Virus record (IMG/VR): IMGVR_UViG_3300041411_000080
Span: 1-64,000 of that record
Reading direction: 5' to 3' (one strand)
DNA length: 64,000 nucleotides
Positions 26,787-51,940 of this stretch are shown piece by piece (the stretch's first letter is position 1; every line of letters begins with the position of its first letter). A program made the translations under genes and the position numbers. Under the pieces are notes generated by a model. That model made no database searches, was not told the DNA's origin, and was given only the letters and a program-made list of their open reading frames with translations.

Positions 26787-27126
26787 CTATTCGTTCCCTT
26801 TCTTCTGGTGGGAGAACATGCATAGGCATGCGGTTATTTGGATAAGTGAACATACGGTGGCCTGGGCGTGGCTTAGTGGTATAATCCAATACCACGTCGG
26901 TCCACGTTACTACAAAACCACCGAACCATCCAACGATAGGCTTACGTCGCTCAATCTCCTCCCATGTAACTCTGGTGTATCCAGCGTACTCTTTACCGTC
27001 GAGATCATAGAAGCGTTCTTCAACAGTAACTTTACCTAGGAACACACCGAGGTCTTCATCAAAACATTGTTTTAATGCATCCCAAGATGGGATATCTGGA
27101 TTGGAGTCTGAGCTATACGTCTTCAT
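26716..27126 (-). CDS. hypothetical protein (136 aa)
   Basis: ATGA coupling to the RNA ligase stop. Confidence 0.7.
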   Translation of the reverse strand: MKTYSSDSNPDIPSWDALKQCFDEDLGVFLGKVTVEERFYDLDGKEYAGYTRVTWEEIERRKPIVGWFGGFVVTWTDVVLDYTTKPRPGHRMFTYPNNRMPMHVLPPEERERIDAFFEYDRRFTGSRNDVRRLCHR

Positions 27127-28597: not shown

Positions 28598-28834
28598 TTA
28601 TTTAGGTACGTTTTCTTTATCAAGCCAGTCTGAGATAATTTCATCTGTAACTTCTCGACCTTGCCTGCTGAATAAGGCTTTTACATCGGCAACTGATGCG
28701 AGGATAGGCTCCATACCACTACGGAACTTATCAAGCTGCTTACACTCGTAGTAATACACCCGCTCATCAAGTGTAAGTGGAACACCCTCAGCGATCTTGG
28801 TATCGATCTTAACACGAGTTTCAGTTTTCATCAA
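28598..28834 (-). CDS. hypothetical protein (78 aa)
   Basis: coupled to the thyA stop. Confidence 0.75.
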   Translation of the reverse strand: MMKTETRVKIDTKIAEGVPLTLDERVYYYECKQLDKFRSGMEPILASVADVKALFSRQGREVTDEIISDWLDKENVPK

Positions 28835-30276
28835 ACGGCTACCTTACCGGCGATGTGTGGATGTGATTCATACCCGAGGATAACGAAATCGTCCGGTGTA
28901 ATCTCACGCTGGTCTTTACCATACACTTCGGGCTTGAACAGGATGCGGGGTGTATCGTACGGTTCACGAGTCAGCTGAAGATCAGTTTGTTCCTGATGAT
29001 TCGAATAAATGTGGCAGTCCCCGCCAGTCCAGATGAACTCTTCCGCAGCCATGTTGAACTGGTTAGCGAGTTGGTGAGTCATCAACGAATAGAAGGTGAT
29101 GTTGAACGGCTTACCGAGGAAGGTATCCACCGAACGCTGATACAGATGGCAGCTCAGACCACGGCGTGGTGCCTGTACATTATCAAGCCAACTATGCATG
29201 AACTCTTCAGTGACATCACTTGGCTTATTCAAGGCACACAGACTACTCTTGAAATTTTCCACTGAACGAATCGGTGGCAACCCGCGAGCTGGATCAAATG
29301 CTGCTTGAGCATCTAGTCGGTCTTGATATGCATTGAGGCGTTCTTCCAGATTCAGTTCACGAGTCCAGAACTGGAAGAAGCAGTGGCATGGCGGGAGAGC
29401 CTGATCTTCTACCAGACGTGGGTCCCATGCACAGACGATAATCCGACGGGAGTCAGGACCATTAGCCAGCTGATCCATTACATCTTGCAGTTGGTCAATA
29501 CGACGACGGATAACACATTGGTCAGTCGCAGTATCTGTACCCGGAATGTCTACAACGAAAGTGAAACCACGTTTCTCGTAATCCACCCATTCCAACTTAG
29601 GGATGATACGGACATCATCGATGTTCCGCCACGTCTTACCGTACACTGCACCCAGATCACCACCGATCAAACGTTGTGGTTCGGATTTGAAGAACAGTCG
29701 ATGTAGACGCTTCATGCACTCAAAACCGAAGTTGGTCGCATGGGTAGCATCAGGTGACTCGACTTCTTTCCATTTAACAAGATTAACCTTAACGATCTTC
29801 TTAACGTCTTCACGATCTTTGATGTTAGGGTACTGTGCCCAGAATGCTTCAACTCCTTCAGGACTCAGTTCCGCGAGGAAGCTCTGGATATCCTCAATAG
29901 CGATATCGTTCTCGACGTCGAAGGTAGTGAACACAAGTACCCACTTACCGTCAATGTGCTTATCGATCTTGATGGTAAGATCGTATTCATCCAATGGTGC
30001 GTATTCAGCGGTTTCTGGTTTAACCCATTCGTTCCAGATACGTACACCATTACGGATCAGGTAGTCTACACGAGTATCACCAGAAGACATCCAGATCAGT
30101 TCATGGATTACCGAGTGAAGGTGAATCTTCTTGGTGGTTACCACAGGCAACTTATTGTTACGCAGATCGTAACGTTCGTGTTGACCAAACATGGACTGTG
30201 TGCCAGTACCAGTACGGTCACCTTTAAAGATGCCGAGGTCTTTGATCATTTGAAGCGATTGAAGATACTGATGCAT
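28831..30276 (-). CDS. thyA: thymidylate synthase with three insertions
   Basis: VTTKK, IWNEW, LGAVYG, SRRII..AW, ALPPCH, YQRSVD.FLG.PFN, GDCHIY.NH. Confidence 0.95.
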   Translation of the reverse strand: MHQYLQSLQMIKDLGIFKGDRTGTGTQSMFGQHERYDLRNNKLPVVTTKKIHLHSVIHELIWMSSGDTRVDYLIRNGVRIWNEWVKPETAEYAPLDEYDLTIKIDKHIDGKWVLVFTTFDVENDIAIEDIQSFLAELSPEGVEAFWAQYPNIKDREDVKKIVKVNLVKWKEVESPDATHATNFGFECMKRLHRLFFKSEPQRLIGGDLGAVYGKTWRNIDDVRIIPKLEWVDYEKRGFTFVVDIPGTDTATDQCVIRRRIDQLQDVMDQLANGPDSRRIIVCAWDPRLVEDQALPPCHCFFQFWTRELNLEERLNAYQDRLDAQAAFDPARGLPPIRSVENFKSSLCALNKPSDVTEEFMHSWLDNVQAPRRGLSCHLYQRSVDTFLGKPFNITFYSLMTHQLANQFNMAAEEFIWTGGDCHIYSNHQEQTDLQLTREPYDTPRILFKPEVYGKDQREITPDDFVILGYESHPHIAGKVAV

Positions 30277-30725: not shown

Positions 30726-31898
30726 TTATGCTTCCGCCATGGTTGGAACTTTCTTTGGTTTACCGGTGAGCACTTTCAGCCAAGAAGGACGAGCCTTACG
30801 CTTACCCGGCCAAGTGCATTTGGTTACATCCAGATCAGGGAAGAAGCAGCTATTGCCATTAGCCCCATCGGAACGAAGCTCTGGTTGGGTAGACTTCATG
30901 GCATTCGCTATAACGAACTTATCGGTAGGAGCGAGCTTCTCAAGAGCTTCACGACGAGCCAACTTTTCACGATGTACGGTATCGATCCAAGGCATACTGG
31001 CTTGAGGCTTCTGCTTACCGCCTTCGATTACGGTCCAATTACGATCACGCATTTTAGTTTCCAATGTGTCATGGCCGATCATGCGACCCCATTCACCTTG
31101 TGGTTTAAGGTCAACCTTACCGGGAAAGTTAAGGATGGTAGCGTCACCACTGAAAGTAGCATTGCCCTTATCACCGAAATCAACTTTGAAGACGTTGGTA
31201 TCTTCTTTGATTGGACTAGCCAGTATAACCAACTTACCTTCAGAGTCAACTTTGAAACCATCACATTGAATAGACATACCTTGTTTACGCCATGATTCAT
31301 TCAATGCGTCGATTTCTGCTTGGGTTGGAATTGATACCTCAACCGTAGTACCATCAGTCTTAACTACTGATACAGTCGACTCAGGCGTAGCTACGTCAAT
31401 CGCCGCCAACTCTCGGGCTTTGATATCGGCACGGAGAGCAGCCAACTCTTCATCGGTGATCTCATCAATGCTCTCAACATGACCGTTGTTGAAAGTAATG
31501 CGATGTTTACCATTATCCAGTACTTCGACACCAACTGGTTCGATGCCATCTGGAAGATCCAATTCAACATCACCGTAATCTTCGAAGTAAGGGAAGATGT
31601 TAGGGATACCTGTGGTAGGATCTTCAGCAGCATATACTGCGGTGTAAGGAATCTCCAGTTGGATCTCCTTACCTTGACGACGGGACCAGAAACTGAACGA
31701 CTCATCACCGGTAGTGAAGTGACGGGTAGCATTCGCTGAGATGTTCAAACAAATCATCCCAGAGACGGGGTTCATATCCTCGAGGTAGTCCTTTGGATCG
31801 AACTGTGCAGCCTGTACGTAGATGTGCCATTTGGCAGCATTCTCGGTAACGAACCAATCCAGCAATGCTTGAAACGTAACTTTAGCCATGGGTATCAT
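30726..31898 (-). CDS. sspB: SspB-like ClpXP adaptor with a long acidic linker
   Basis: ALLDWF...LNISANAT...FWSRRQG..QLEIPYTAVYA; C-terminal RPSWLKV resembles the XB ClpX-binding tail. Confidence 0.7.
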   Translation of the reverse strand: MIPMAKVTFQALLDWFVTENAAKWHIYVQAAQFDPKDYLEDMNPVSGMICLNISANATRHFTTGDESFSFWSRRQGKEIQLEIPYTAVYAAEDPTTGIPNIFPYFEDYGDVELDLPDGIEPVGVEVLDNGKHRITFNNGHVESIDEITDEELAALRADIKARELAAIDVATPESTVSVVKTDGTTVEVSIPTQAEIDALNESWRKQGMSIQCDGFKVDSEGKLVILASPIKEDTNVFKVDFGDKGNATFSGDATILNFPGKVDLKPQGEWGRMIGHDTLETKMRDRNWTVIEGGKQKPQASMPWIDTVHREKLARREALEKLAPTDKFVIANAMKSTQPELRSDGANGNSCFFPDLDVTKCTWPGKRKARPSWLKVLTGKPKKVPTMAEA

Positions 31899-32232: not shown

Positions 32233-32661
32233 TTACTGAGGGTTGTAGTCGATGTGACGAGTGGCGTCAATCATATCGAACGCAAGGATGTTAGTAATCT
32301 TACCTGCGGTGGTTTCGTGTTTACGAACCGAGATAGAGAACTCCTTGTGTTTAGGTTCTGTTTGGAGACGCACGAAAGTTTCTGCGAATGGACCGTAAGG
32401 TTCACAAGTAAAACTGACGCTATCCTCAGACCAGACTGGATTGATCAACCGGCAACATACGCGATCCATGTTAACTTCACGCATACGTCGGAACCACCAA
32501 GTGATATCCAGATCCCCACGGATAGGGGAACCGAACTCACAATACACTCCATCCTTAACACATGGCTGCTTAAGGAATTCCTCAAGTGCAATGCGAAAGG
32601 CGGGAGACTTACGGGTCAAATCGATTTCGTAATGCATATTACCCCAGCATGGCTCGTTCAC
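32233..32661 (-). CDS. degenerate T4 gp21-like (S77) prohead-protease-fold protein
   Basis: CEFGSP...DRVC...PYGP...FSISVR...FDMI. Confidence 0.4.
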   Translation of the reverse strand: MNEPCWGNMHYEIDLTRKSPAFRIALEEFLKQPCVKDGVYCEFGSPIRGDLDITWWFRRMREVNMDRVCCRLINPVWSEDSVSFTCEPYGPFAETFVRLQTEPKHKEFSISVRKHETTAGKITNILAFDMIDATRHIDYNPQ

Positions 32662-34375
32662 GGACTTGAGCGAAAGTTACTTCATTAGGGAACTTGCCAT
32701 CTTTGAAGATGACTTTCAGTTCACCCGAGGAAGTATCGATCTCATCAATCCCGAAAGTTTGGTTCTGTTGCAGAACGTAGTCACCTGCTTCATCACGGAC
32801 AACCTTCAGGAAACCTTTAGCCGATTTCTTGTTGGTTTCACCTTCGGTCTTAGGTGCTTTGAACAGTTCAACGAACAGGTCGTCTACTTGAACAGCGGTA
32901 GCTTTAACCGCAAAGCCGAAAGTGTCACGGGTGTTGTGCTGATAGGTGTAAGAACCGATACCCAGTACCCAGTTAGACGATGCAAAGCCTTTCTTCATCA
33001 GGCGACGCATGATCTCTTCGGTACGGGCTACAGTGATCGAGTCACCATAGATCAAGCCGATACGTTCGTGGAGAACTTTGAAGCCTTTCTCGTTGATAGT
33101 ACCACCGAAGGTTTCCCACAGCAGTTCAACTGCACCACGTTGTTCAGGAGTCAGTTCAACAGGAACGTATTCGTACCCATCGCGCTCCAATACAACCTTG
33201 CGGATCTGACCATCGACACTGACGTATTTACCAGTGATAGATTTACCTGCATGAATCATGTCCGAGATTTCAGACACGGTGAAGATCTCAGCGCCACAGA
33301 TTACTTCTACAGGATCACCCGAGTCAGGACGAACCACAACTTTAGCCAGACCGTTAGCATCCGGTTGACGACCGAGGATCTCAGCCTTAATGGATGGGAA
33401 GACGTTGGTCAGAACACCCCAGAAGTCAAAGCTGTCCGATACCAGAGAGATGATCCCTTTAGGTACCTTAACAGTAATGGCTTCAATGATGAACTCACGT
33501 TCTGCTTCCAGCTTCAGGGTATTGAGTTCGTCAGCAGTAAAGTCTGCTTCGGTCTTACCCAGCTCCTTCAGCTTAACAGCCAGACGGTACAGGATGTTCG
33601 AAGTGGCGACGGCGTGTTCGGTAGCTACTACGGAAGCGGCCAGGAACTCTTTGTCAGCATCTGCAAAGTACATGTCTTCAACGAAGTCAATCGCTGGCAG
33701 AGTGTCAGTACCTTTGAAGAACACCAAGTGACCAGCGTTCGAGAATGCAGCTGCTTGTGGGTTGTTGATACCACGCAGTGCAAAGTCGTGACCTTGGAAG
33801 TCAACACCTTCGATTGGAGAACCAGTCAGGTGTGCGAAGTGTTCCAGTACACGGCGATACTCGTAAGCGATGGTGGTGTTGCAGACCATAGCCCAGATCA
33901 ACGAGGACATGAAGGTTTCGAGATAGTTCACAACCCAGTAGAACTCAGGGAGCGTATTGTAGATCACGTAACCCGGAACGTTCATGTTCAGGCGGGAACC
34001 TTCTGGTACCGACAGTACAGTAATAGGCAGGTAACCCAGATCGTGCAGAGCAGCCATGGCTTCGATGTCAACCATACCTTCACCGAGGTAAGTATCCATA
34101 CGACGCTTGTAACGACGGATCACAGTGGCCTTGTCTTTCTTGAAGAAACTGGCATCCCAGATACCGGCAACTTCACGCATTACGGCTTGGATACCAAACC
34201 AAACAACTTTGTGGTCCCAGAACATCGATTGGGACTTAGAACCCAGGAACAAGCGGTCAGCACGTGGAGTACCGTTACCGTAAGCGAAGTTAGTGCCGTA
34301 TGGATACAGAGGACCGTGCCCCATTTTGTAACCATCAGCTACGGTTGGACCAAACAGTTGAAAGTTAGTAGACAT
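32639..34375 (-). CDS. nadV: nicotinamide phosphoribosyltransferase-like protein (Namat-like in the NARP1 context)
   Basis: DGYKMGH, DFALRG, ATEHAV, VSDSFD, VRPDSGDP, IYGDSIT, G.GSYTYQHNTRDTFGFAVKAT. Confidence 0.9.
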   Translation of the reverse strand: MSTNFQLFGPTVADGYKMGHGPLYPYGTNFAYGNGTPRADRLFLGSKSQSMFWDHKVVWFGIQAVMREVAGIWDASFFKKDKATVIRRYKRRMDTYLGEGMVDIEAMAALHDLGYLPITVLSVPEGSRLNMNVPGYVIYNTLPEFYWVVNYLETFMSSLIWAMVCNTTIAYEYRRVLEHFAHLTGSPIEGVDFQGHDFALRGINNPQAAAFSNAGHLVFFKGTDTLPAIDFVEDMYFADADKEFLAASVVATEHAVATSNILYRLAVKLKELGKTEADFTADELNTLKLEAEREFIIEAITVKVPKGIISLVSDSFDFWGVLTNVFPSIKAEILGRQPDANGLAKVVVRPDSGDPVEVICGAEIFTVSEISDMIHAGKSITGKYVSVDGQIRKVVLERDGYEYVPVELTPEQRGAVELLWETFGGTINEKGFKVLHERIGLIYGDSITVARTEEIMRRLMKKGFASSNWVLGIGSYTYQHNTRDTFGFAVKATAVQVDDLFVELFKAPKTEGETNKKSAKGFLKVVRDEAGDYVLQQNQTFGIDEIDTSSGELKVIFKDGKFPNEVTFAQVRERAMLG

Positions 34376-34384
34376 GTAGTTTCC

Positions 34385-35290
34385 TTAGATGGCAAGCCAA
34401 TTCATTTTTGGATTTACGAGACCGTTACCGTCAGTGTTGCCGGTAGCAGTAGGTTGGAACGAGTTGGTGGTAGTAACACGATCGAAGAGTTCGGTTACAA
34501 CTTCAGTACCGTAGCTGAAGATACCGTGAGTAACCCAGAGTTCAAGACTCAGAGGTTCGTATTCACGGATAGCTTTAGCCAGAGCAATAAAGGTACGACC
34601 ACCGTCACAGATGTCATCGACTACGAGCAGACGCTTGTTACCCACATGGGCATCAAAGCGAGTACCGGTGATTTCCATGGTTTCCAGATCACGATCTTTA
34701 GTAGCGCAGATGTAACCTGCTGCACCCAGTTCGGTAGCCAGTGCTTTAACGCGTTTCTGCGCACCAGCATCTGGAGCTACCAAATAGACTTCACTGAAAT
34801 CCATGTTACCGTAATAGGTATCACGACGCATGACATCCGCCAGAGGACGTACAACCGAACGCTTGATCAGCGCCGGAGTAACGTCACTGTGTGGGTCAAG
34901 CAAAGTCACTTTAGTGAAAGCCAGACGGTTGATTACGTCAGCAAACACTGCAATGCCATTTGCTTCACCCGGATTGCATACTCGGTCTTGCCGAGCGTAC
35001 GGCGTGTAACCCATCTCCAGAGCGACAGGCATGTCGGGATCGATACGACGGATCGCATCTACTACCAGCATCAGTTCAAAGCAAGTATCTGCCGAGTTGA
35101 GGTATGTCTTAAGTACAATCTCAGAAGCTGTGTCAATCCGTTCACGTACAGGTTGTGGAAGGCGAGGGTTTACCTCACCTCCTTTGAAGACTGGAGCTGA
35201 ACTGTTAATCCAGCTAGTACGGATGGTTTGACCCGCTTCGTGACGAACCAATTGAATTTCAATCATGATCGATACCTTGGTTAGATTCAT
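34385..35290 (-). CDS. prs: ribose-phosphate pyrophosphokinase-like protein (Adps-like in the NARP1 context)
   Basis: F.GGEV, PYARQDR, DPHS, APDAGA, VVDDICDGGRTF. Confidence 0.9.
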   Translation of the reverse strand: MNLTKVSIMIEIQLVRHEAGQTIRTSWINSSAPVFKGGEVNPRLPQPVRERIDTASEIVLKTYLNSADTCFELMLVVDAIRRIDPDMPVALEMGYTPYARQDRVCNPGEANGIAVFADVINRLAFTKVTLLDPHSDVTPALIKRSVVRPLADVMRRDTYYGNMDFSEVYLVAPDAGAQKRVKALATELGAAGYICATKDRDLETMEITGTRFDAHVGNKRLLVVDDICDGGRTFIALAKAIREYEPLSLELWVTHGIFSYGTEVVTELFDRVTTTNSFQPTATGNTDGNGLVNPKMNWLAI

Positions 35291-35299
35291 TACACCACA

Positions 35300-35319
35300 G
35301 TGATATAAATCTGAAATTT
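35300..35319 (-). promoter_or_regulatory. phiKZ-type early promoter driving the prs-nadV pair
   Basis: AAATTTCAGATTTATATCAC. Confidence 0.75.
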
Positions 35320-35330
35320 ATTGAGTTGAC

Positions 35331-35537
35331 CTAGAACCCAGCTAAAGTAGCTAACAGCTTGAAAATTCCCGCAACTACACTTAGGAGAATGCCGTAGAGA
35401 CTGATAACCCATCCAAGGGTCATCAGTCCGGCAAAGCCGGAATGGTTGTCTTTCATCAGGTAGCACATCAAAGACATGATGAAGAAGAATGTCCAGAGTA
35501 CTGTGTGTGCAATAATCATAATTAACCTTTTACGCAA
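35331..35537 (-). CDS. two-TM membrane protein (68 aa)
   Basis: two hydrophobic helices. Confidence 0.7.
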   Translation of the reverse strand: MRKRLIMIIAHTVLWTFFFIMSLMCYLMKDNHSGFAGLMTLGWVISLYGILLSVVAGIFKLLATLAGF

Positions 35538-36766
35538 ACGATTTGCTTGAGTGTATGAACGATCTCAACGAGGTCAGCCTGAGCAGCCATAACGTCTTCA
35601 ATGTTCTTGTAAGCCTTAGGGGTTTCATCCAAGACTTCTTTATCTTTACGACATTCAACACCGAAAGTATCACGTAGGTGATCTTCCATGGTGAAGACTT
35701 TCTTAGCCTGGTTACGGGACATCACCCGACCAGCACCATGAGAACACGAGCAGAAGGATTCTTCGTTACCCAGCCCACGAACGATGAAAGACTTAGCACC
35801 CATCGAGCCAGGGATAATACCCAGTTGATCTTTCTGTGCCGACACTGCACCTTTACGCGTCACGACGACTTGCTCACCGAAATGGGTCTCTTCCGACACG
35901 TAGTTGTGGTGGCAGTTAACTGCATTCAAGGTGGTGGTGATAGGACGACCCATGAACTTAGCGAAGGCTTCGATGGTGTTACGCATCATTACCGAACGGT
36001 TGAGTGCAGCAAATCGCTGAGCAGCCAGTACACCACGACGGTAGTCATTGTAGCTCTCGGTATCGATATTCAGGTAAGCGAGATCTTGATCAACAAGCTG
36101 AATACCCGCTTGGATCATTTCTTCTTTAGCCTGATTGATGAACAATGTACCGATAGCATTACCTACACCACGTGAACCGGAGTGCAACATAATCCACACA
36201 CGTTGTTCTTCGTCTAGACAGATCTCCACGAAGTGGTTACCAGTACCCAGAGTACCACAATGGTTGAATGCGTTATCCACAGCTCGCTTCAGAGTTTTGT
36301 ATTTACCCGACAGGTAAGCGAACTCTGATCTGATCGCCTGGACTTCTGTTTGCATCGCCATATCCAGCTTATCATAGACGATCGAGAAGTTACCCCATGC
36401 ACCACGGTCACCAGGACGACCGTTATTAGTGCGACCATGTGGCACTGCGGCTTCGATCAGACTACGTAGACCCGACAAGTCATCAGGTAGGTCTGATGCT
36501 ACGAAGTTGGTCATCTGTGCGGCCATACCGCAACCTAGGTCTACCCCTACAGCTGCCGGAATGATAGCTTGTTTAGTGGCGATCACGGAACCAATGGTTG
36601 CACCTTTACCAAGATGTACGTCAGGCATTACTGCAAGATGCTTGTGGATGAATGGGAGGTTAGCAATATTTTTCAATTGCTTCAGAGCTTCGGCCTCCAC
36701 AGGAACACCTTTAACCCAAGCTTTGATGGGAGTTTCGTTTTCAGCAGACAGATTAATGTACGACAT
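35522..36766 (-). CDS. rtcB: RtcB 3'-phosphate RNA ligase
   Basis: MPDVH.GKG..IG, GVDLGCGM, GTLGTGNHF, HSGSRG, HHNY, RKGA, PGSMG, HGAGR, DE.PKAYK. Confidence 0.95.
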   Translation of the reverse strand: MSYINLSAENETPIKAWVKGVPVEAEALKQLKNIANLPFIHKHLAVMPDVHLGKGATIGSVIATKQAIIPAAVGVDLGCGMAAQMTNFVASDLPDDLSGLRSLIEAAVPHGRTNNGRPGDRGAWGNFSIVYDKLDMAMQTEVQAIRSEFAYLSGKYKTLKRAVDNAFNHCGTLGTGNHFVEICLDEEQRVWIMLHSGSRGVGNAIGTLFINQAKEEMIQAGIQLVDQDLAYLNIDTESYNDYRRGVLAAQRFAALNRSVMMRNTIEAFAKFMGRPITTTLNAVNCHHNYVSEETHFGEQVVVTRKGAVSAQKDQLGIIPGSMGAKSFIVRGLGNEESFCSCSHGAGRVMSRNQAKKVFTMEDHLRDTFGVECRKDKEVLDETPKAYKNIEDVMAAQADLVEIVHTLKQIVCVKG

Positions 36767-40550: not shown

Positions 40551-40801
40551 GCATTACCCATACAGTCTTTAAACATCAGGTTCATCCGAGTAGCGGTAAA
40601 CCAACGATTGGACTTTCGTACCGTACGTTTGGTGTATCGTTCTTTAAACTGCTTACGGATGAGACTGAGTGAACTACCGTCGGTTAAAGCCTCCATCAAA
40701 TACATGCGGAAGTCATTCCACCATGCTACGTATTGATCAAGGTCTTTTTCGTCCCGCCGTTTCTTTTTCGGCAATCGTGTTGCAGGTCTCGGTTTCTTCA
40801 T
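40526..40801 (-). CDS. basic hypothetical protein (91 aa, start MKKPR)
   Basis: GGAG SD before ATG 40801. Confidence 0.65.
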   Translation of the reverse strand: MKKPRPATRLPKKKRRDEKDLDQYVAWWNDFRMYLMEALTDGSSLSLIRKQFKERYTKRTVRKSNRWFTATRMNLMFKDCMGNAWGREGLR

Positions 40802-41816
40802 CTGTTGTAATTCTCCACGAAACAGTACCCATATAGACACTGTACAAAACCTTTAAAGGGGGATTCACTAATAGAGGCTGTGTATCAACGCTAGCTGGGT
40901 ACTTAGACTGATTAGTGCAATAAACACCAACCGGTACAGTTTTACCATCCCAGGTGAAGTCAATGGCGTCGGTAAAGATGTCCAGCTGATAATCACCAAT
41001 CTTGTAATCTTTTGCCAACCGTTCAATAGCGCTGACCAACAGTTCTTTAACGTAAAACGGACGGGATGCAGTAGCCTTAGAATCAGCGATGATCTCCATC
41101 GCATAATAATGAATCGGAGCGTGTGCAGTTTTCCGATGCGTGAGTCGTATCGCATGCTTGTCATTTACCGAATCCACTTTCTTTATTTCGTACCAACGCT
41201 TCGGATCGGTGTCTTTACGGTGCTTACGGTCTATTTTGGCGTCATCAAAAACACCAACTTGATTAGGGTCGAATGCTGTACCCAGTTCAGACGATGTAAT
41301 CAACCGGCGATTACCTATGTACTCTCGTGGTACTAGGATCTCTTTTTTATCGACATACAGGCGAATGTTATCACCCGAGAAGATCTCATTGGTAATTGCC
41401 ATCTCGTGCAGTCTGTAATACTGATGTGGCTTCAACCGACTGGCGATCTTCTTCAACCATGCAATGACTTCTTCACGATCGTTCTCACCTTCCTGGTCAC
41501 GCAACTCATGGAAATCACTATCCTCCAAATCCATGAGGTTAATCCTCATGTAGGCCACGTCGTCCACAGGGTTCCAATCTGAGAGCGTATCAGTTCGATT
41601 ACCTTTATGGCCAAGGACCTGATAGTGTACATCGTATCGCTTGTTGATACCACGACCACCAAGATATCTACCTGTGCCTTTAAAGTAGACCAAAGCAGTC
41701 TCTCGGTGTGCATACGCCTTAACGTAAGGAACGCCGTTGCGTAACCGTTCAGCGATCAGTTCAAGTCCTTCGTTCTTGCCGAACCAATTATCAAAAATTG
41801 ATTTTAATATTTCCAT
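40737..41816 (-). CDS. hypothetical protein (359 aa)
   Basis: long ORF coupled to the ligA end. Confidence 0.8.
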   Translation of the reverse strand: MEILKSIFDNWFGKNEGLELIAERLRNGVPYVKAYAHRETALVYFKGTGRYLGGRGINKRYDVHYQVLGHKGNRTDTLSDWNPVDDVAYMRINLMDLEDSDFHELRDQEGENDREEVIAWLKKIASRLKPHQYYRLHEMAITNEIFSGDNIRLYVDKKEILVPREYIGNRRLITSSELGTAFDPNQVGVFDDAKIDRKHRKDTDPKRWYEIKKVDSVNDKHAIRLTHRKTAHAPIHYYAMEIIADSKATASRPFYVKELLVSAIERLAKDYKIGDYQLDIFTDAIDFTWDGKTVPVGVYCTNQSKYPASVDTQPLLVNPPLKVLYSVYMGTVSWRITTDEETETCNTIAEKETAGRKRP

Positions 41817-43902
41817 CAGGATGCACCACCAAGCTTAAGAATGTAATTTCATCAGGGGATGATTGTTCGATGACCTTTTCTTCGTTGTGGATAACCCAAG
41901 GGATACCCAGCTCTTTAGCGCTGGCTAGTTTATGAGCGGTGTACTTGGTACCACAAACGATCATCGACGTTTTGGATGTAACGTCTTTAGTAATCTTAGC
42001 TCCCAAACTTTTATAGTGAGCCTCGACTTCTTTACGTTTCTGACCAGAGAAGTTGCTACCAGTTACAACGATAGATGCATTACCTAAGACACCGTCACCT
42101 TGACGCTTAGCAGGTGCTCTCAACCATTGCATCTTAGGGAAGTTCCGCCAACTAGATTCTTCTTCTGGTTTAGCACGATCTTCATCGAAGTATTCAAAGA
42201 TACATGTAGCACCAAGCTTACCGATATCTTCGACTTCTAACAGATCATTGTAGGACGCAGTAGAAAGATCATGGATATGCTGGAAGTGTTGTGCCAGTTT
42301 CTCCGAAGAGTTCTTAGCAATACCGTCAATACCGAACGACATCACCAAACGTTCCAGTGTCATGTTGGCTTGAGCGATTACGATAGCCTCTAGAAGCTTC
42401 TCAGTCTCTCGCTCAGACAGTCCAACGCTCAACAGGTCCTCACGTGTCAGATCGAACACTTTAGCAGGCTGGTAAGCTTCTAGGATCTTAGCGTCATGTA
42501 GCTGCTTAATAGTAGCTGGACCCAGACCTTTGATGTTAAAGACATCGCGATCCATGCAGTACTCTAGATGAGCAATGCGTCGACCATAGCACTGACGGTT
42601 ATCACAGTTGTCAGTTTCTTTACCATCTTTGTTAACCACGATAGAGGTTGGGGTGTTACATACTGGACAATGAGTCAGTGGCTCGTAGAGGACCTGATCG
42701 GTGTGTTCTACGGTTGTACCCATTACGTAGGGGATCACATCACCTGCACGTTTGATTTGCACGCTACAGCCTTTATAGAGCTTTAGACGGTCAACCTCGT
42801 TACGGTTATGCAACGTTACGTTAGAGATCATCGTACCATGAACATGAACTGGTTCTACACGAGCCACTGGAGTCAGTCGGCCTGTACGACCTACCTGATA
42901 CTCGACGTTGAGTAGTGGTGTTACACCTTCAGATGCAGGGAACTTAAAAGCAGTAGCCCACTTAGGTGCACGGGAAGTCATGCCGAGGAATTTACGATGC
43001 GCATGCTTAACTACCTTGAAGACGATACCATCGACTTCGTAAGGTTGCTCAGAACGAATGGACTGCATCTTCTCGATGAACTTTGGCCACCCGGTGATGT
43101 AATGATCCGATGGGTAGTTTAGTACATCAGGAATAGCCGCTACTTCGAATCCGTTTGTAGTAAGAGACTCTTGTTCATAGTACCAATCGCGATCGATTGT
43201 GTCCCCTTCACTGTCAAACGAGTATCCCACAAACTGCAACTTACGCTCAGCTGTTACAGCTGGGTCTTTTTGACGCAAACTACCGGCGGCGTAGTTTCGT
43301 GGGTTAGCAAAGGTCTTCTTACCCTCGGCTGCTAACGCATCGTTAATAGCCCTGTAGTCCGCTAGAGCCACCACCACTTCACCTGTAACCAACGTATACT
43401 CATTGGTCCAGGTAGTCAGTGTTTTAGGGATACCCTTGATCTGCAAAGCATTAAGAGTTACGTTCTCACCTGTTTCACCATCGCCACGAGTTACAGCCCA
43501 AAGCAGTTTACCATTGCGGTAAACCAGTCTTAGGCTCAGACCGTCTAGCTTCCATTCACCTCTCACTTCAAGACCCGTAGTCTCTGGATCACCAGTGATG
43601 TCGATGCTCCAGTCAACCGCTTCATCAGAATCAAAGGTGTTAGCCAGACTCAACATTGGCAAACGGTGCTTCAACGGTTTGAAGTGACCAAACGTCATTG
43701 CATGTCCGACTTTCTGAGTTGGAGAAGCTGGAGTTACCAACTCTGGGAACTGCTTCTCTATATGAACCAGTGCACGGAACTTCTGGTCATACTCAGCGTC
43801 TGGGATCTTCGCATCATCCAAGACATGGTAATGATAGTTCAGCTCATCAATCTCAGCACAGGCAATAGCATAAGCTTCACGTAGTTCTTTCATGTTCGTC
43901 AT
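41791..43902 (-). CDS. ligA: NAD+-dependent DNA ligase
   Basis: Y...DAEYD, PMLSLAN, EWKLDG, TRGDG..GE, NPRNYAAGSLRQ, DGIVFK, PKWATAFKFP, VGRTG, Zn finger CPVC, BRCT. Confidence 0.95.
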   Translation of the reverse strand: MTNMKELREAYAIACAEIDELNYHYHVLDDAKIPDAEYDQKFRALVHIEKQFPELVTPASPTQKVGHAMTFGHFKPLKHRLPMLSLANTFDSDEAVDWSIDITGDPETTGLEVRGEWKLDGLSLRLVYRNGKLLWAVTRGDGETGENVTLNALQIKGIPKTLTTWTNEYTLVTGEVVVALADYRAINDALAAEGKKTFANPRNYAAGSLRQKDPAVTAERKLQFVGYSFDSEGDTIDRDWYYEQESLTTNGFEVAAIPDVLNYPSDHYITGWPKFIEKMQSIRSEQPYEVDGIVFKVVKHAHRKFLGMTSRAPKWATAFKFPASEGVTPLLNVEYQVGRTGRLTPVARVEPVHVHGTMISNVTLHNRNEVDRLKLYKGCSVQIKRAGDVIPYVMGTTVEHTDQVLYEPLTHCPVCNTPTSIVVNKDGKETDNCDNRQCYGRRIAHLEYCMDRDVFNIKGLGPATIKQLHDAKILEAYQPAKVFDLTREDLLSVGLSERETEKLLEAIVIAQANMTLERLVMSFGIDGIAKNSSEKLAQHFQHIHDLSTASYNDLLEVEDIGKLGATCIFEYFDEDRAKPEEESSWRNFPKMQWLRAPAKRQGDGVLGNASIVVTGSNFSGQKRKEVEAHYKSLGAKITKDVTSKTSMIVCGTKYTAHKLASAKELGIPWVIHNEEKVIEQSSPDEITFLSLVVHPDGNIKINF

Positions 43903-44899
43903 TGGATTTTCCTTTTAGTAGTTTGATGGCCCATTCAGGGTAGCGTGATGTATACCCCAACTCCAACCGGCGTTGAGTCTCCAGTACCCGGAAGGTAAGA
44001 CCATCTGTCGGGAACATGTAATCATTCAAGTTCTCTGATACAAAAGACTCGATGCATTCTTCAATAGCACCGACCTCACGAACCTTACCATTGAAGACGA
44101 ATGCTGGCATGTGATGGAATCCCCAACTGGACATTATAGCCCGTAGTTCCATCAGCTCGAAGGTACAACCTGGAATGTTGACGGTGTGCGGGATGAACGT
44201 CAGACAATCTGGTTTTATCCCTTGATCACGAAACATGTTCATCATGACCTGTGTAGCTGTCATCTCAGGACCCACATCTTTCCAATCAGTTAACTCCATG
44301 TGTTCCGCTGTTGAGATAACAACTTTCCCATGGATATTAACACGCTCAGTTTCATTGATGTGTTGTGGTACACCATCAACCATGTACATGTGCATAGTGA
44401 CGTCTTTACCTACCAGACCATCACCATAATTAACGGCCTTGTGTAAAGACCCACCCACGTAAACCAACTCAACCTCAATACCTCTAAGAGCTGGCTCACA
44501 CAGGATGTCTTTTGCATCCACCGACTCAAACCAACGTCTTAGACTAGAAACGTCATGAGCTTCTCTCAGAGGTAACATTGGGAAGTCGTGTTTGGTTAAC
44601 TCCCCACGCGATAACATCTGTTCACGAATATTACGTGCTTGTGGTATGGCCGTCGCTGCATGTGGGTTCTCACGACACATACGTTCGTAATCTCGCTTGT
44701 AAATATCGTACTGCACGTCTGAGATCAATGGTTCTTTAAAGACGTGGTACATCAAGTCGTAGTTAGTGAGGGTGGCTCTCAATTCGTGGAGCTTTTGTAT
44801 CGATTGCATCGCCGTATTGCTCGGCAGCTTTGGCCCACCAGTCTGGGGTATGTGCATAGTAGTATTCACCGAAGATGTGGGTTGCGAGGGCATTATCAA
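43877..44899 (-). CDS. LigA adenylation-domain paralogue lacking the catalytic Lys (pseudo-ligase)
   Basis: ISDVQYD, FPMLPL, EPALRG in place of KxDG, GDG.VG.DVT, TDGLTF, GYTSRYPEWAIK; no OB, Zn finger or BRCT. Confidence 0.75.
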   Translation of the reverse strand: MIMPSQPTSSVNTTMHIPQTGGPKLPSNTAMQSIQKLHELRATLTNYDLMYHVFKEPLISDVQYDIYKRDYERMCRENPHAATAIPQARNIREQMLSRGELTKHDFPMLPLREAHDVSSLRRWFESVDAKDILCEPALRGIEVELVYVGGSLHKAVNYGDGLVGKDVTMHMYMVDGVPQHINETERVNIHGKVVISTAEHMELTDWKDVGPEMTATQVMMNMFRDQGIKPDCLTFIPHTVNIPGCTFELMELRAIMSSWGFHHMPAFVFNGKVREVGAIEECIESFVSENLNDYMFPTDGLTFRVLETQRRLELGYTSRYPEWAIKLLKGKSNDEHERTT

Positions 44900-45395
44900 A
44901 AGCGTCTAGCTTAGCTTGGTTGAGCTTTTTGATATTATGCTCCACCATGTTCATGAAGTGCTTGACGACAACCGACTGTGTAGCCAGAACGCAGTCAGAC
45001 TTACATGAAATGTCCACGAAACTGAGCGAATGACGATCACGTATCCCGTGACACGTTACGAGTAGGATATCTTCCACAAACAGTGAATATAATTCACGTA
45101 GGTCCTTGGAGTAGTCATCCGAGTCCTGTGTAAAGATCAGTTCCAACAGTCGGAGAGTCGGTTTAAGACGTTTAGGAATACGATCAGCGAAGCGTGAATA
45201 GTTGTCAAGGTCTTCACGATCTTTCTCCGTAAGCGTAAACATGAAACCGTAGATCGGTTCCAAGTACTTACCAGCTTTGAACAGATAAGGTTTATCCCGT
45301 TTTGGTGGTTCCCAGATGTAGTGCTTCTTAATGGTAGGTTGCTTGAACTGGTGTACCTCAATCGGTAACCCATCCGTGAATGTTAAGAAATGCAT
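44763..45395 (-). CDS. hypothetical protein (210 aa, start MHFLT)
   Basis: GAGG SD after a terminator. Confidence 0.75.
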   Translation of the reverse strand: MHFLTFTDGLPIEVHQFKQPTIKKHYIWEPPKRDKPYLFKAGKYLEPIYGFMFTLTEKDREDLDNYSRFADRIPKRLKPTLRLLELIFTQDSDDYSKDLRELYSLFVEDILLVTCHGIRDRHSLSFVDISCKSDCVLATQSVVVKHFMNMVEHNIKKLNQAKLDAFDNALATHIFGEYYYAHTPDWWAKAAEQYGDAIDTKAPRIESHPH

Positions 45396-45404
45396 GGTAA
45401 CCTC

Positions 45405-45437
45405 AGACAAAATAAAAAAGAGTCCCCGAAGGGACTC
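45405..45437. repeat. 33-bp exact repeat, copy 2 (terminator plus T-rich tail)
   Basis: identical to 24576..24608. Confidence 0.85.
45420..45437 (-). terminator. intrinsic terminator, cUUCGg loop
   Basis: GAGTCCC-TTCG-GGGACTC-TTTTTT. Confidence 0.85.
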
Positions 45438-50477: not shown

Positions 50478-51128
50478 TCAGCAAAGATTTTCTAAACGTG
50501 GATCTGTTGGCTTCAGGATTTGACGCCAATCAATTTCTTCATAGGGGTAGTCTTCCTCGTAACGCTTGAGGAATTCCAATGCCCACTTAGTACCTGCTTC
50601 AGTGAACAGGTTCTTGCGAATAGGTACACCTGCTTCAATAGCCAGATGTAGGGCTGTAGCGGTGCCACCCGTAATCACTTCGCGTTTAGGGTCACCCTTG
50701 GTAGGGGCAGAATAGATAATCGCTCTCACATGCGATTTAAGGTCATGTCCAAAGATTTGGAACACGTTACGAGTATGTAGTGATTCCCCGTAATCATCCA
50801 GTCCCCTGAATGAACCTCTAGCTGACTGTGCCATAGCTCTAGCTAGATCCCAGTTCTCTGCGAAGTCTTGTGCGATCATAAAGAATGGATGTTGAGCAAC
50901 TCGTCTACGAGAAGCTTTAGACTCCACCAAATAAATTCTAGCCCCTACCTCGGAATACTTCCGGGATTGTTTAGCACCATACCAACCAGCGCGGTCAGCC
51001 CCGAAAGCATCGCCTGAACTAACAGCGATCCCTAGATCCGTATAGGTACGACCTATACGAATCAGTAGTTCAAGATCATCAAGACTCGCTTCACGCGAAC
51101 CTACTATTGCAACGTATTCTTGTTCCAT
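50478..51128 (-). CDS. SLOG/DprA-like nucleotide-binding protein
   Basis: VAIVGSR, SSGDAFGAD, GGTA.A. Confidence 0.7.
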   Translation of the reverse strand: MEQEYVAIVGSREASLDDLELLIRIGRTYTDLGIAVSSGDAFGADRAGWYGAKQSRKYSEVGARIYLVESKASRRRVAQHPFFMIAQDFAENWDLARAMAQSARGSFRGLDDYGESLHTRNVFQIFGHDLKSHVRAIIYSAPTKGDPKREVITGGTATALHLAIEAGVPIRKNLFTEAGTKWALEFLKRYEEDYPYEEIDWRQILKPTDPRLENLC

Positions 51129-51940
51129 CCATTACTCTCCAAAACATCCCCGAAGAAGAACTCTACAGGATTAGTCAGTTGAGTAATTGGTGGTAATTCA
51201 AGTTCGGTCATTATACGCGCGTCCTTAAGAATGTACCCGCCGTTTGTACGAGCGTGGTGCTTAGGAGGCAATAGATCGATGTCAGCTTGATCGAGTTTCT
51301 TATCCGTAGTTAACTCTTTCCAACCAATATAGGTACCACGTTTGAAGAAGTACGGATAGTGGTTCCAGTTCACACCGTGTTCAGACCACAACATCTCCTG
51401 AATCTCTGATGTATTCTTTTTGTGGAGTTGTTTATTGGAGAAGTAGTGGTGACCTGCCATTTGAATGGAATTCTTGGTAGCATCCCATTCACGCCAGATC
51501 AATACGTTCACAGCTTCCATGAGGTTTGGTACGTTCCATACGCGTGCATCAAACGTAGGGTTACGTTTAGCGTATTTCGGCATGTGCTCTAGGATGTACT
51601 GGTTGAAGTAAAGCGTGGCATGTGACCCTAGAAGGCTAACCATCTTCTGTACTCGTCCGTCAAACCAAGTCTTGGATTTAAATGAAGGACTAAACCAGAT
51701 AAGCGTAATCTCATCAGACTGTGTATAACCTACGGTTGCGTTAGTGTGCCTCACCAGTTCCTTAGTGGTGTGGATCATTGCTTTCGACATCGTGGCGTCG
51801 AATGGACGTTCCATACCGCGAGTGAATCTGGAGAATCCACGTCCATCAATCCGAGCTACGATTGGTACTAACGGCATAAAGCGCTCTTGCGCCATAGCCG
51901 ATTCATAAAGCTTCATACGATCGCCAAGTGCATCATTCAT
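51104..51940 (-). CDS. thg1: Thg1-like tRNA-His guanylyltransferase / 3'-5' polymerase
   Basis: RIDGRGFSRF, PFD, YTQSDEI, FDGRVQK, FDAR, WREWDA.KNS. Confidence 0.9.
   Translation of the reverse strand: MNDALGDRMKLYESAMAQERFMPLVPIVARIDGRGFSRFTRGMERPFDATMSKAMIHTTKELVRHTNATVGYTQSDEITLIWFSPSFKSKTWFDGRVQKMVSLLGSHATLYFNQYILEHMPKYAKRNPTFDARVWNVPNLMEAVNVLIWREWDATKNSIQMAGHHYFSNKQLHKKNTSEIQEMLWSEHGVNWNHYPYFFKRGTYIGWKELTTDKKLDQADIDLLPPKHHARTNGGYILKDARIMTELELPPITQLTNPVEFFFGDVLESNGWNKNTLQ

What the first reader, a model, noticed from the sequence alone, without database searches (positions are those of the whole stretch)
43877..44899. Catalytically dead LigA paralogue directly upstream of ligA
Seen: domain Ia (YHVFKEPLISDVQYD) and adenylation-domain motifs are retained, but KxDG reads ALRG and the OB, Zn finger, HhH and BRCT domains are absent. 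The ORF is uninterrupted and overlaps the ligA start. Known: domain Ia binds the NMN moiety of NAD+. Inference: a pseudoenzyme acting as NAD/NMN binder, ligase regulator, or decoy for ligase-sensing defence, in the same genome region as NARP1.
Basis: partly seen in the sequence, partly recalled or inferred. Interest (0 to 1): 0.7.

Follow-up and report, generated by a model that had tools for sequence, protein, structure and literature searches.

The report
Dead LigA copy beside phage ligase
A jumbo phage carries, directly in front of its working NAD-dependent DNA ligase gene, a shortened copy of that ligase that has lost its catalytic residues yet is kept intact by selection, so it probably has a new non-enzymatic job that is still unknown.

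Summary
Window 43877-44809 (-), with a maximal ORF to 44899, encodes a protein of about 310 aa. It has only LigA domain Ia and the nucleotidyltransferase (NTase) domain, and motif I KxDG reads ALRG. Its stop lies 26 nt inside the start of a complete LigA gene (41791-43902).

- **Catalysis:** the equivalents of D117, E173, R208, R277 and K314 are lost in all 20 family members, and R308 is Glu in all 20. K115 is lost in 18 of 20.
- **Not a pseudogene:** dN/dS is 0.06-0.17, similar to LigA. Four other metagenomes show no indels and 21 synonymous against 9 non-synonymous changes. The short gene-LigA pair recurs in every related locus examined.
- **Range:** the family is small, with six clusters at 50% identity among 1.84 billion proteins. 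It forms one clade arising among LigAs of nucleus-forming (chimalliviral) Pseudomonas phages; 201phi2-1 gp332, Phabio gp331 and Viktualia are members.
- **Domain Ia:** the NMN-contact residues are kept in the window's clade and the Phabio clade but lost in the 201phi2-1 clade.
- **NARP1:** no link. 201phi2-1 has the paralogue but no Namat match.

Function is unproven. My best guess is a non-catalytic partner of LigA, possibly responsive to nicotinamide nucleotides. I found no literature on it.

The parts
43877..44809 (-). Pseudo-ligase CDS, 310 aa from the ATG at 44809. The maximal ORF extends to a TTG at 44899, and an alternative ATG lies at 44752.
   Evidence: family alignments A2/A3
44606..44809 (-). 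Domain Ia-like N-terminal helical module (residues about 1-68). The equivalents of Y22, H23, D32, Y35 and D36 are retained.
43910..44605 (-). Degenerate nucleotidyltransferase (adenylation) domain, residues about 69-300
   Evidence: Pfam PF01653; AF2 model with pLDDT 85 and Foldseek top hits to LigA adenylation domains
44480..44497 (-). Former motif I, reading E-P-A-L-R-G. The Lys nucleophile is Ala and the Asp is Arg.
43877..43902 (-). 26-nt overlap between the end of the pseudo-ligase gene and the start of ligA. The Shine-Dalgarno-like AAAGGAAAA for ligA lies at about 43907-43915, inside the pseudo-ligase gene.
   Evidence: overlaps of 4-44 nt in all relatives
41791..43902 (-). Complete NAD+-dependent DNA ligase LigA (703 aa) with domains Ia, NTase, OB, Zn, HhH and BRCT and all catalytic residues present
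   Evidence: NCBIfam equivalog 570.7 bits against a cut-off of 369
44763..45410 (-). Conserved hypothetical gene upstream. Its 3' end overlaps the pseudo-ligase start by 47 nt if translation starts at 44809. The gene order dCTP deaminase, this gene, pseudo-ligase, LigA is shared with Viktualia and Phabio.

Best explanation
This is a catalytically inert LigA paralogue, a pseudo-ligase, that selection keeps intact.

**Shown.**
- It arose once, by tandem duplication of a chimallivirus-type ligA.
- It lost the OB, Zn, HhH and BRCT domains, the adenylation chemistry and the nick-binding arginines.
- It has since been kept under purifying selection, always directly upstream of a complete ligA and overlapping it.

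**Inferred.**
- It no longer ligates or adenylates, and acts by binding.
- It is most likely made together with LigA by translational coupling and serves as a non-catalytic accessory or regulatory partner of the phage ligase.
- In the window's lineage the intact domain Ia pocket suggests this role may still respond to a nicotinamide nucleotide such as NMN or NAD+.

My confidence that it is a selected, dead pseudoenzyme is about 0.9. The figure in the confidence field is for the proposed partner mechanism.
For: **Homology and fold.** Pfam PF01653 E 4e-23. AF2 model pLDDT 85, pTM 0.82, with top Foldseek hits all LigA adenylation domains.

**Dead site.** In 20 of 20 family members the equivalents of D117, E173, R208, R277 and K314 are replaced, and R308 is Glu. 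K115 is replaced in 18 of 20. The six full-length LigAs in the same alignment (four phage LigAs, one library representative and E. coli LigA) keep all of these residues. It scores 113.8 bits against a 369-bit cut-off for the NCBIfam LigA equivalog.

**Selection.**
- Pairwise dN/dS is 0.06-0.17, against 0.03-0.14 for LigA.
- Four independent metagenomes show no indels and 21 synonymous against 9 non-synonymous differences.
- Homologues from 98% down to 33% identity all keep a length of about 280-340 aa.
- About 30 positions are conserved only in the paralogues, many of them charged, which points to a new constrained surface.

**Coupling to LigA.** In all nine loci examined the short gene is immediately upstream of a full ligA, overlapping it by 4-44 nt (window; relatives). 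The ligA Shine-Dalgarno-like sequence lies inside the paralogue.

**Single origin.** The paralogues form one clade (SH-aLRT 100). Its branching mirrors that of the neighbouring LigAs.

**Domain Ia.** The NMN-contact residues are kept in 10-12 of 12 sequences of the window and Phabio clades, while the motif I columns are among the least conserved.
Against: - There is no direct evidence of a paralogue-LigA contact. The single complex prediction returned no answer.
- Adjacency and overlap are common in phage operons. The upstream and downstream genes here overlap as well.
- The domain Ia NMN residues are lost in the 201phi2-1-side clades, and the AMP-pocket residues are altered everywhere. Any nucleotide dependence is therefore not family-wide.
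- Related phages such as PhiPA3 have a LigA but no paralogue, so LigA does not need it.
Confidence: 0.35

Rival explanations
1. It binds a small molecule independently of LigA. It would bind NAD+, NMN or an NAD-derived molecule (ADPR, or cyclic ADPR-type immune signals) in a remodelled Ia-NTase cleft, and act as a sensor, buffer or sponge that helps the phage under NAD+-targeting host defences.
For: - The domain Ia NMN-contact residues are retained on both sides of the deepest split in the paralogue clade. This holds although catalysis was lost in all members, which implies selection on that pocket after inactivation.
- E113 is kept in 9 of 12 sequences of the window and Phabio clades. The Y225 position is a conserved His there.
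- Several paralogue-specific conserved positions sit next to NAD+-site elements in the sequence, at E. coli positions 25, 26, 59-65, 76-77 and 114.
- Lys-less LigA adenylation modules are known to hold NAD+: PDB 5tt5 is LigA K115M with NAD+, and PDB 8jyd is a LigA-based genetically encoded sensor (titles).
- The phage invests in NAD+ rescue through NARP1 genes (PMC12774641).
Against: - The 201phi2-1-side clades have lost the Ia residues but keep the gene under the same constraints.
- E173, K290, K314 and R136 are altered.
- No binding was tested.
- There is no link to NARP1 presence.
- A stoichiometric sponge for an abundant metabolite such as NAD+ is implausible.
Confidence: 0.2
2. It is a decoy or inhibitor aimed at a host factor. 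The LigA-like surface would either mimic phage LigA to absorb a host defence that recognises or inhibits the ligase, or interfere with host LigA.
For: Only indirect evidence. It has a conserved LigA-like fold without activity. The paralogue evolves about twice as fast at non-synonymous sites as the LigA NTase domain (dN 0.26 against 0.11 for window versus L013), as arms-race proteins often do. One relative (L011) shows mosaic divergence within the gene.
Against: dN/dS stays low at 0.06-0.17, with no sign of positive selection at this resolution. No defence system known to sense LigA was found in the literature searches. The surface residues that define LigA's DNA and NAD sites are the ones that changed.
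Confidence: 0.1
3. It is still an enzyme. It would carry out either adenylation through another lysine (K124 or K25 of the 310-aa protein are nearly invariant) or a new chemistry on a nucleotide substrate.
For: K124 (in the L-H-K-A segment) and K25 are conserved in 85-90% of members. So are H74, D75, H123, R59, R156, E250 and E251.
Against: All other elements of the covalent nucleotidyltransferase site are gone in every member: motif I Asp, motif III Glu and motif V Lys, together with R208 and R277. Motif IV Asp and Lys are variable. K124 aligns to E. coli S132, four residues before R136 on the same strand, which by inference places it away from the nucleotide phosphate.
Confidence: 0.06
4. 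It is a decaying remnant of a duplicated ligA with no function.
For: It has lost the catalytic residues and the C-terminal domains.
Against: The frame is intact in every relative down to 33% identity. dN/dS is 0.06-0.17. There are no indels in four metagenomes. About 30 positions are conserved only in the paralogues.
Confidence: 0.02

Closest known systems
Bacterial and phage NAD+-dependent DNA ligase LigA, N-terminal domain Ia plus NTase module (for example E. coli LigA, PDB 2owo and 5tt5; PhiPA3 gp257)
   Same: Homologous fold and domain order (Ia followed by NTase). Structural core positions are shared: G118, Y125, G137, G139, G142, T146, G172, G286 and the G-x-T-S-R-x-P-x-W segment. The closest LigAs are those of chimalliviruses.
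   Different: It has no OB, Zn-finger, HhH or BRCT domain. The Lys nucleophile and the motif I Asp, motif III Glu, motif V Lys, R208 and R277 are replaced, and R308 is reversed to Glu. It fails the LigA equivalog cut-off.
Split (heterodimeric) NAD+ ligase of T5-like phages (PR1 ligase, PDB 9hu3 and 9i5i)
   Same: A stand-alone LigA N-terminal protein of about 330 aa, encoded in a phage, that works with a second ligase-derived polypeptide. It shows that an NTase module can work with the remaining ligase domains supplied on a separate chain (entry titles).
   Different: By my reading of the entry titles and my recollection of phage T5 annotation, the two chains there make up one active enzyme. 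Here the partner gene already encodes a complete, catalytically competent LigA and the short protein is dead. Sequence similarity is weak (E 3.6e-5 over about 80 residues).
Catalytically disabled LigA adenylation modules used as NAD+ binders (E. coli LigA K115M with NAD+, PDB 5tt5; LigA-based genetically encoded sensor, PDB 8jyd)
   Same: An Ia plus NTase module without the lysine nucleophile. These show that such a module can bind NAD+ without reacting (entry titles; that the sensor detects NAD+ is my own recollection).
   Different: Those are engineered point mutants that keep the full nucleotide pocket. The natural protein has also changed E173, K290, K314, Y225 and R208, so binding cannot be assumed.
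E. coli LigB-type reduced NAD+ ligases
   Same: A LigA paralogue that has lost domains.
   Different: By my recollection, LigB keeps the active site and the OB and HhH domains and is a weak but real ligase. The window protein scores 59.6 bits against a 498-bit cut-off for the LigB model and lacks the catalytic residues.

Membership tests
NAD+-dependent DNA ligase LigA (functional enzyme) | Motif I KxDG with the lysine nucleophile (E. coli K115, D117) | tested here: not met
   It reads A-L-R-G. K115 is replaced in 18 of 20 family members and D117 in 20 of 20.
NAD+-dependent DNA ligase LigA (functional enzyme) | Motif Ia Arg, motif III Glu, motif IV Asp and Lys, motif V Lys (R136, E173, D285, K290, K314) | tested here: not met
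   In the window protein these are Y, K, D, R and L. E173 and K314 are replaced in 20 of 20.
NAD+-dependent DNA ligase LigA (functional enzyme) | OB fold, Zn finger, HhH and BRCT domains for clamping DNA | tested here: not met
   The protein ends after the NTase domain. Pfam finds only PF01653 and a weak PF22745 match.
NAD+-dependent DNA ligase LigA (functional enzyme) | Score above the curated equivalog cut-off (NCBIfam NF005932 / TIGR00575) | tested here: not met
   113.8 bits against 369, and 109.4 against 444. The neighbouring LigA scores 570.7.
LigA adenylation-domain superfamily (homology only, Pfam PF01653) | Significant match to the adenylation-domain profile and the same fold | tested here: met
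   82.7 bits against a cut-off of 27. Foldseek E about 1e-23 to LigA adenylation domains.
LigA domain Ia NMN-binding module | Residues equivalent to E. coli Y22, H23, D32, Y35 and D36 | tested here: met
   All five are present in the window protein and kept in 10-12 of 12 sequences of the window and Phabio clades. They are lost in the 201phi2-1-side clades.
LigA domain Ia NMN-binding module | Actual binding of NMN or NAD+ | not testable with these tools
   This needs ITC, DSF or co-crystallisation.
Split heterodimeric NAD+ ligase (T5/PR1 type), N-terminal subunit | The partner gene encodes only the C-terminal OB/HhH half, and the N-terminal subunit carries the active site | tested here: not met
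   The partner is a complete 703-aa LigA with its own Ia and NTase domains, and the short protein lacks the active site.
Pseudoenzyme (operational definition) | Homologous to an enzyme, catalytic residues missing, and maintained by purifying selection | tested here: met
   residues; selection; a coherent family of single origin.
Pseudoenzyme (operational definition) | Experimentally shown lack of activity | not testable with these tools
   This needs an adenylation and nick-sealing assay.

The most novel reading that the evidence does not exclude
The protein is a natural nicotinamide-nucleotide-binding pseudo-ligase. In this reading a dead Ia-NTase module binds NAD+, NMN or an ADPR-derived immune signal. 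It thereby either keeps the co-translated phage LigA charged and active when host NADase defences deplete NAD+, or sequesters an NAD-derived alarm signal. Either way it would be a previously undescribed class of phage cofactor chaperone or anti-defence sponge built from a ligase domain.
Probability: 0.15. Interest if true: 0.8.

Novelty: new variant of a known kind. Interest (0 to 1): 0.52.

Why it matters
To my knowledge and within the searches run here, no catalytically dead paralogue of NAD+-dependent DNA ligase has been described. Searches found nothing. GenBank labels the three cultured examples simply as NAD-dependent DNA ligase, which is misleading.

The family gives a clean case of an essential replication enzyme being duplicated, truncated, inactivated and then kept for another purpose. 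It occurs in nucleus-forming jumbo phages that can be studied in the laboratory, such as 201phi2-1 and Phabio.

If the protein regulates LigA or binds nicotinamide nucleotides, it would link phage DNA replication to the NAD+ contest between phages and bacterial NADase defences. It could also provide a natural scaffold for NAD-type ligand sensing. If it turns out to be only a structural helper of LigA, the result mainly corrects annotation.

Tried and rejected
1. **Complex prediction.** Paralogue (residues 1-297) with full LigA gave a score of 0.00. The verdict was 'no answer', which counts neither for nor against binding.
2. **Programmed frameshift fusion of the paralogue to LigA.** Rejected. 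Overlap lengths in relatives are 4, 17, 26, 41 and 44 nt, so the frame relation differs between loci. No slippery site is evident in the overlap.
3. **NARP1 linkage.** Rejected as specific. Namat is present in Viktualia, Phabio and one metagenomic relative. No match was found in 201phi2-1, which has the paralogue, nor in PhiPA3.
4. **Other short or unnamed LigA-like hits.** The matches in phiKT1019, pEa_SNUABM_54 and KB12-38 are full-length LigAs. Short hits P0078, P0093 and P0112 keep KxDG, so they are not this family.
5. **A paralogue remnant in PhiPA3.** The unannotated 560-nt gap upstream of its ligA holds none.
6. **DNA mimicry through overall charge.** There is no difference between the paralogues and LigA N-terminal modules: median net charge is -7.5 against -8.
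7. **Literature.** Searches for gp332, gp333, a pseudo-ligase and a heterodimeric ligase found nothing.
9. **Mapping conserved positions onto the 3D model.** Not possible, because model coordinates are not exposed to scripts.
Full report
**1. What is in the sequence**

On the minus strand an ORF runs from 44899 (TTG) to the stop at 43877-43879.

Two ATGs are candidate starts:
- **44809 (310 aa).** Most close relatives start at the equivalent position. The helix it encodes is conserved at the protein level as far out as 201phi2-1 and Phabio.
- **44752 (291 aa).** It lies 10 nt after the stop of the upstream gene, and some gene callers used it.

No convincing Shine-Dalgarno sequence precedes either ATG.

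The stop lies 26 nt inside the next gene, whose ATG is at 43902. That ATG is preceded by AAAGGAAAA inside the paralogue's last codons. The next gene (41791-43902) is a complete LigA. Its Ia, adenylation, OB, HhH and BRCT domains pass Pfam, and there is a weak zinc-ribbon hit. It scores 570.7 bits against a 369-bit cut-off for the NCBIfam LigA equivalog.

**2. Is it a LigA paralogue, and is it dead?**

It is a LigA paralogue:
- Pfam PF01653 matches at E 4e-23.
- BLASTP against the neighbouring LigA gives 24% identity, E 2e-17, across the whole Ia plus NTase region.
- phmmer against the PDB finds only LigA adenylation domains.
- An AlphaFold2 model built on 16 family members has mean pLDDT 85 and pTM 0.82. 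Its 38 best Foldseek matches in the PDB are all NAD+-dependent DNA ligases, mostly their adenylation domains.

To judge activity I fetched E. coli K-12 ligA for numbering. I aligned it with five phage LigAs (one of them a library representative) and 20 members of the short family. All six LigAs keep every residue examined apart from conservative changes at H23, Y35, E113 and R308.

| E. coli LigA residue | Window protein | Short family (20 members) |
|---|---|---|
| K115 (motif I Lys) | Ala | replaced in 18 of 20 |
| D117 (motif I Asp) | Arg | replaced in 20 of 20 |
| R136 | Tyr | variable |
| E173 (motif III) | Lys | replaced in 20 of 20 |
| R200 | Glu | variable |
| R208 | Met | replaced in 20 of 20 |
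| Y225 | His | variable |
| R277 | Leu | replaced in 20 of 20 |
| D285 | kept | variable |
| K290 | Arg | variable |
| R308 | Glu | Glu in 20 of 20 |
| K314 (motif V) | Leu | replaced in 20 of 20 |

The roles I assign to these residues come from my recollection of the published E. coli LigA mutational and structural work, not from a tool. The two members with Lys or Arg at the K115 position (P0018 and Phabio gp331) lack all the other catalytic residues. The protein also falls far below the LigA and LigB equivalog cut-offs. It ends right after the motif V region, so no DNA-clamping domain exists.

**3. Is it a pseudogene?**

It is not.
- A word-indexed search of 5.8 billion proteins found 13 homologues of 35-98% identity, all 281-343 aa long.
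- I recovered six related contigs and computed Nei-Gojobori dN/dS. Excluding the parts that overlap neighbouring genes, the values were 0.06 (window vs L014, dS 0.075), 0.15 (window vs L011, dS 0.51), 0.08 (L013 vs L015) and 0.10 (L015 vs L005). The LigA Ia plus NTase region of the same genomes gives 0.03-0.13.
- The paralogue accumulates amino-acid change about twice as fast as the LigA NTase domain (dN 0.26 against 0.11, window vs L013), but it is clearly constrained.
- Contigs from four independent soil, plant and leaf metagenomes laid on 43800-44900 show no insertion or deletion. Of the 30 substitutions inside the CDS, 21 are synonymous.
- About 30 alignment positions are conserved in at least 85% of paralogues but not in LigAs. 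Many are charged or polar: K25, R59, Q64, D75, E114, H123, K124, Y142, Q149, R156, E245, E250, E251, E283 and E292. This is the pattern of a new constrained function, not of decay.

**4. Where it occurs and how it arose**

The window belongs to a 320,858-bp virus record with direct terminal repeats. It came from a rhizosphere metagenome.

Several features place it among the nucleus-forming phiKZ-like phages (Chimalliviridae):
- The flanking genes include a dCTP deaminase, an HD-domain protein, Thg1, RtcB, an RNA ligase and a thymidylate synthase. A near-identical relative also carries DprA-like and phiKZ gp244-like genes.
- The best tblastn matches in 50,697 phage records point the same way.

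Exactly five records, representing three phages, hold two ligase-like places:
- Pseudomonas phage 201phi2-1 (gp332 and gp333);
- Phabio (gp331 and gp332);
- Viktualia.

In each, a gene of 308-332 aa overlaps the start of a full ligA. In Phabio and Viktualia it follows a dCTP deaminase and a small hypothetical gene, exactly as in the window; in 201phi2-1 it follows the dCTP deaminase directly. Both genes are annotated 'NAD-dependent DNA ligase'. PhiPA3 and the other chimalliviruses listed have a single full LigA, and PhiPA3 holds no remnant of the short gene.

An exhaustive profile search of 1.84 billion representatives found only six clusters of the short family (289-423 bits). The score then drops sharply to full-length LigAs at 180 bits or less. 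All six lack the catalytic set.

In a maximum-likelihood tree the 19 paralogues form one clade (SH-aLRT 100) on a long stem. That stem joins the LigA tree among chimallivirus LigAs (PhiPA3, P0019, Phabio LigA and the neighbouring LigAs). The order of the Phabio-type, 201phi2-1-type and window-type groups is mirrored in the neighbouring LigAs. The simplest reading is one old tandem duplication, followed by truncation and inactivation of the upstream copy and then co-inheritance. The root inside the paralogue clade is inferred from the position of the stem, not tested.

**5. Domain Ia**

The five residues that contact the NMN half of NAD+ in LigA are Y22, H23, D32, Y35 and D36. Their role is my recollection of the literature.
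- All five are intact in the window protein.
- In the window-type and Phabio-type clades, which lie on opposite sides of the deepest split, they are kept in 10-12 of 12 sequences. That is the 78th to 100th percentile of column conservation.
- The former motif I Lys and Asp columns sit at the 17th percentile.
- In the 201phi2-1-side clades the five residues are largely replaced (0-5 of 8 kept).

An NMN-type pocket therefore seems to have stayed under selection after catalysis was lost, in the window's lineage among others. It is dispensable for whatever keeps the gene in the 201phi2-1 lineage. It argues against that idea as the common function of the family.

**6. Mechanism**

These points are shown: the protein is homologous to LigA Ia plus NTase, it lacks the chemistry and the DNA-contact arginines, it is selected, and it is always upstream of and overlapping a complete ligA.

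These points are inferred:
- It works by binding rather than by catalysis.
- The fixed upstream and overlapping arrangement, with the ligA ribosome-binding site inside it, fits co-translation with LigA and a role as its partner.
- The split ligase of T5-like phages (PDB 9hu3 and 9i5i) shows that a LigA N-terminal module can work with the other ligase domains supplied on a separate chain. That makes such a contact structurally plausible.
- PhiPA3 LigA is found inside the phage nucleus (PMC10643120), so a partner would be expected there too.

I commit to this partner model at about 0.35. The rivals are:

| Rival | Confidence |
|---|---|
| LigA-independent binder or sponge of a nicotinamide nucleotide or an NAD-derived signal | 0.20 |
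| Decoy or host-directed inhibitor | 0.10 |
| Residual or new enzyme activity | 0.06 |
| Decaying gene | 0.02 |

The remaining probability is for functions I have not thought of. The only direct computational test of the partner model gave no answer.

**7. NARP1**

A PRPP-synthetase-like gene (34385-35290) and a NAPRTase-like gene (32639-34375) lie next to an RtcB gene, about 6.5 to 9 kb beyond ligA on the same strand. They match the published description of NARP1 as Adps plus Namat (PMC12774641; bioRxiv 10.1101/2024.02.11.579819).

The Namat homologue is present in Viktualia, Phabio and one metagenomic relative. No match was found in 201phi2-1, which has the paralogue, nor in PhiPA3. Proximity in this window is therefore not evidence of a functional link.

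**8. Comparison with what is known, and verdict**

The protein belongs to the LigA adenylation-domain superfamily by homology, but it fails every functional criterion for LigA. It is not the N-terminal subunit of a split ligase, because its partner is complete. It resembles engineered Lys-less LigA modules that bind NAD+ (PDB 5tt5 and 8jyd), but it has lost more of the pocket.

I found no paper that mentions gp332, gp331 or a dead LigA paralogue. The library does not cover all journals. I rate it a new variant of a known kind: a real, conserved, narrowly distributed pseudo-ligase with unknown function. It is of moderate interest, and the cultured phages 201phi2-1 and Phabio make it directly testable.

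Noticed in passing
window 32639-36766 (-): This is a candidate NARP1 cluster. RtcB (35522-36766) is followed by a PRPP-synthetase-like Adps candidate (34385-35290) and a NAPRTase-like Namat candidate (32639-34375). The Namat protein is 81-86% identical to those of Viktualia, Phabio and a metagenomic relative, whereas the pseudo-ligases of Viktualia and Phabio are only 32-36% identical to the window's (65% for the metagenomic relative). The cluster is therefore either far more conserved or recently exchanged.
   Followed up: partly
window 28831-30276 (-): A thymidylate synthase of 481 aa, about 200 aa longer than the Pfam model. The match is split in two stretches, so there are large internal insertions. 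I did not determine what the insertions are.
   Followed up: no
window 27123-28565 (-): An RNA ligase with an N-terminal PHA02142 OB-fold domain. Together with RtcB and a Thg1-like tRNA-His guanylyltransferase (51104-51940), it suggests an RNA/tRNA repair toolkit in this part of the genome.
   Followed up: no
window 30726-31898 (-): A 390-aa protein with a weak SspB-like (ClpXP adaptor) N-terminal match, E 1.4e-4, below the Pfam cut-off.
   Followed up: no
L011:683-1558 versus window 43877-44752: There is a mosaic within the pseudo-ligase gene. Between the window and L011 the paralogue has dS 0.45 and dN 0.073, concentrated in its C-terminal half. The adjacent LigA has dS 0.17 and dN 0.009. 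This suggests a recombination breakpoint inside or next to the paralogue.
   Followed up: partly
L015:1078-2022: In one relative an HNH endonuclease gene is inserted between the dCTP deaminase and the small hypothetical gene upstream of the pseudo-ligase.
   Followed up: no
L004:3443-4007 (PhiPA3): The unannotated 560-nt gap upstream of PhiPA3 ligA contains an open frame of about 180 codons with no similarity to the pseudo-ligase.
   Followed up: partly
window 40737-41816, 43877-43902 and 44763-44809: Four consecutive genes overlap on the minus strand: the hypothetical gene, the pseudo-ligase, LigA and a 359-aa hypothetical gene. The overlaps are 47, 26 and 26 nt. The conserved K-G-K near the pseudo-ligase C-terminus coincides with the ligA Shine-Dalgarno-like sequence, so that conservation may be at the nucleotide level rather than the protein level.
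   Followed up: partly
ESM Atlas clusters: Several other viral clusters of stand-alone LigA adenylation-domain proteins exist, at 245-323 aa with 50-134 members each. I did not check whether any of them is also catalytically dead. The three short hits I did inspect (P0078, P0093, P0112) keep KxDG.
   Followed up: partly
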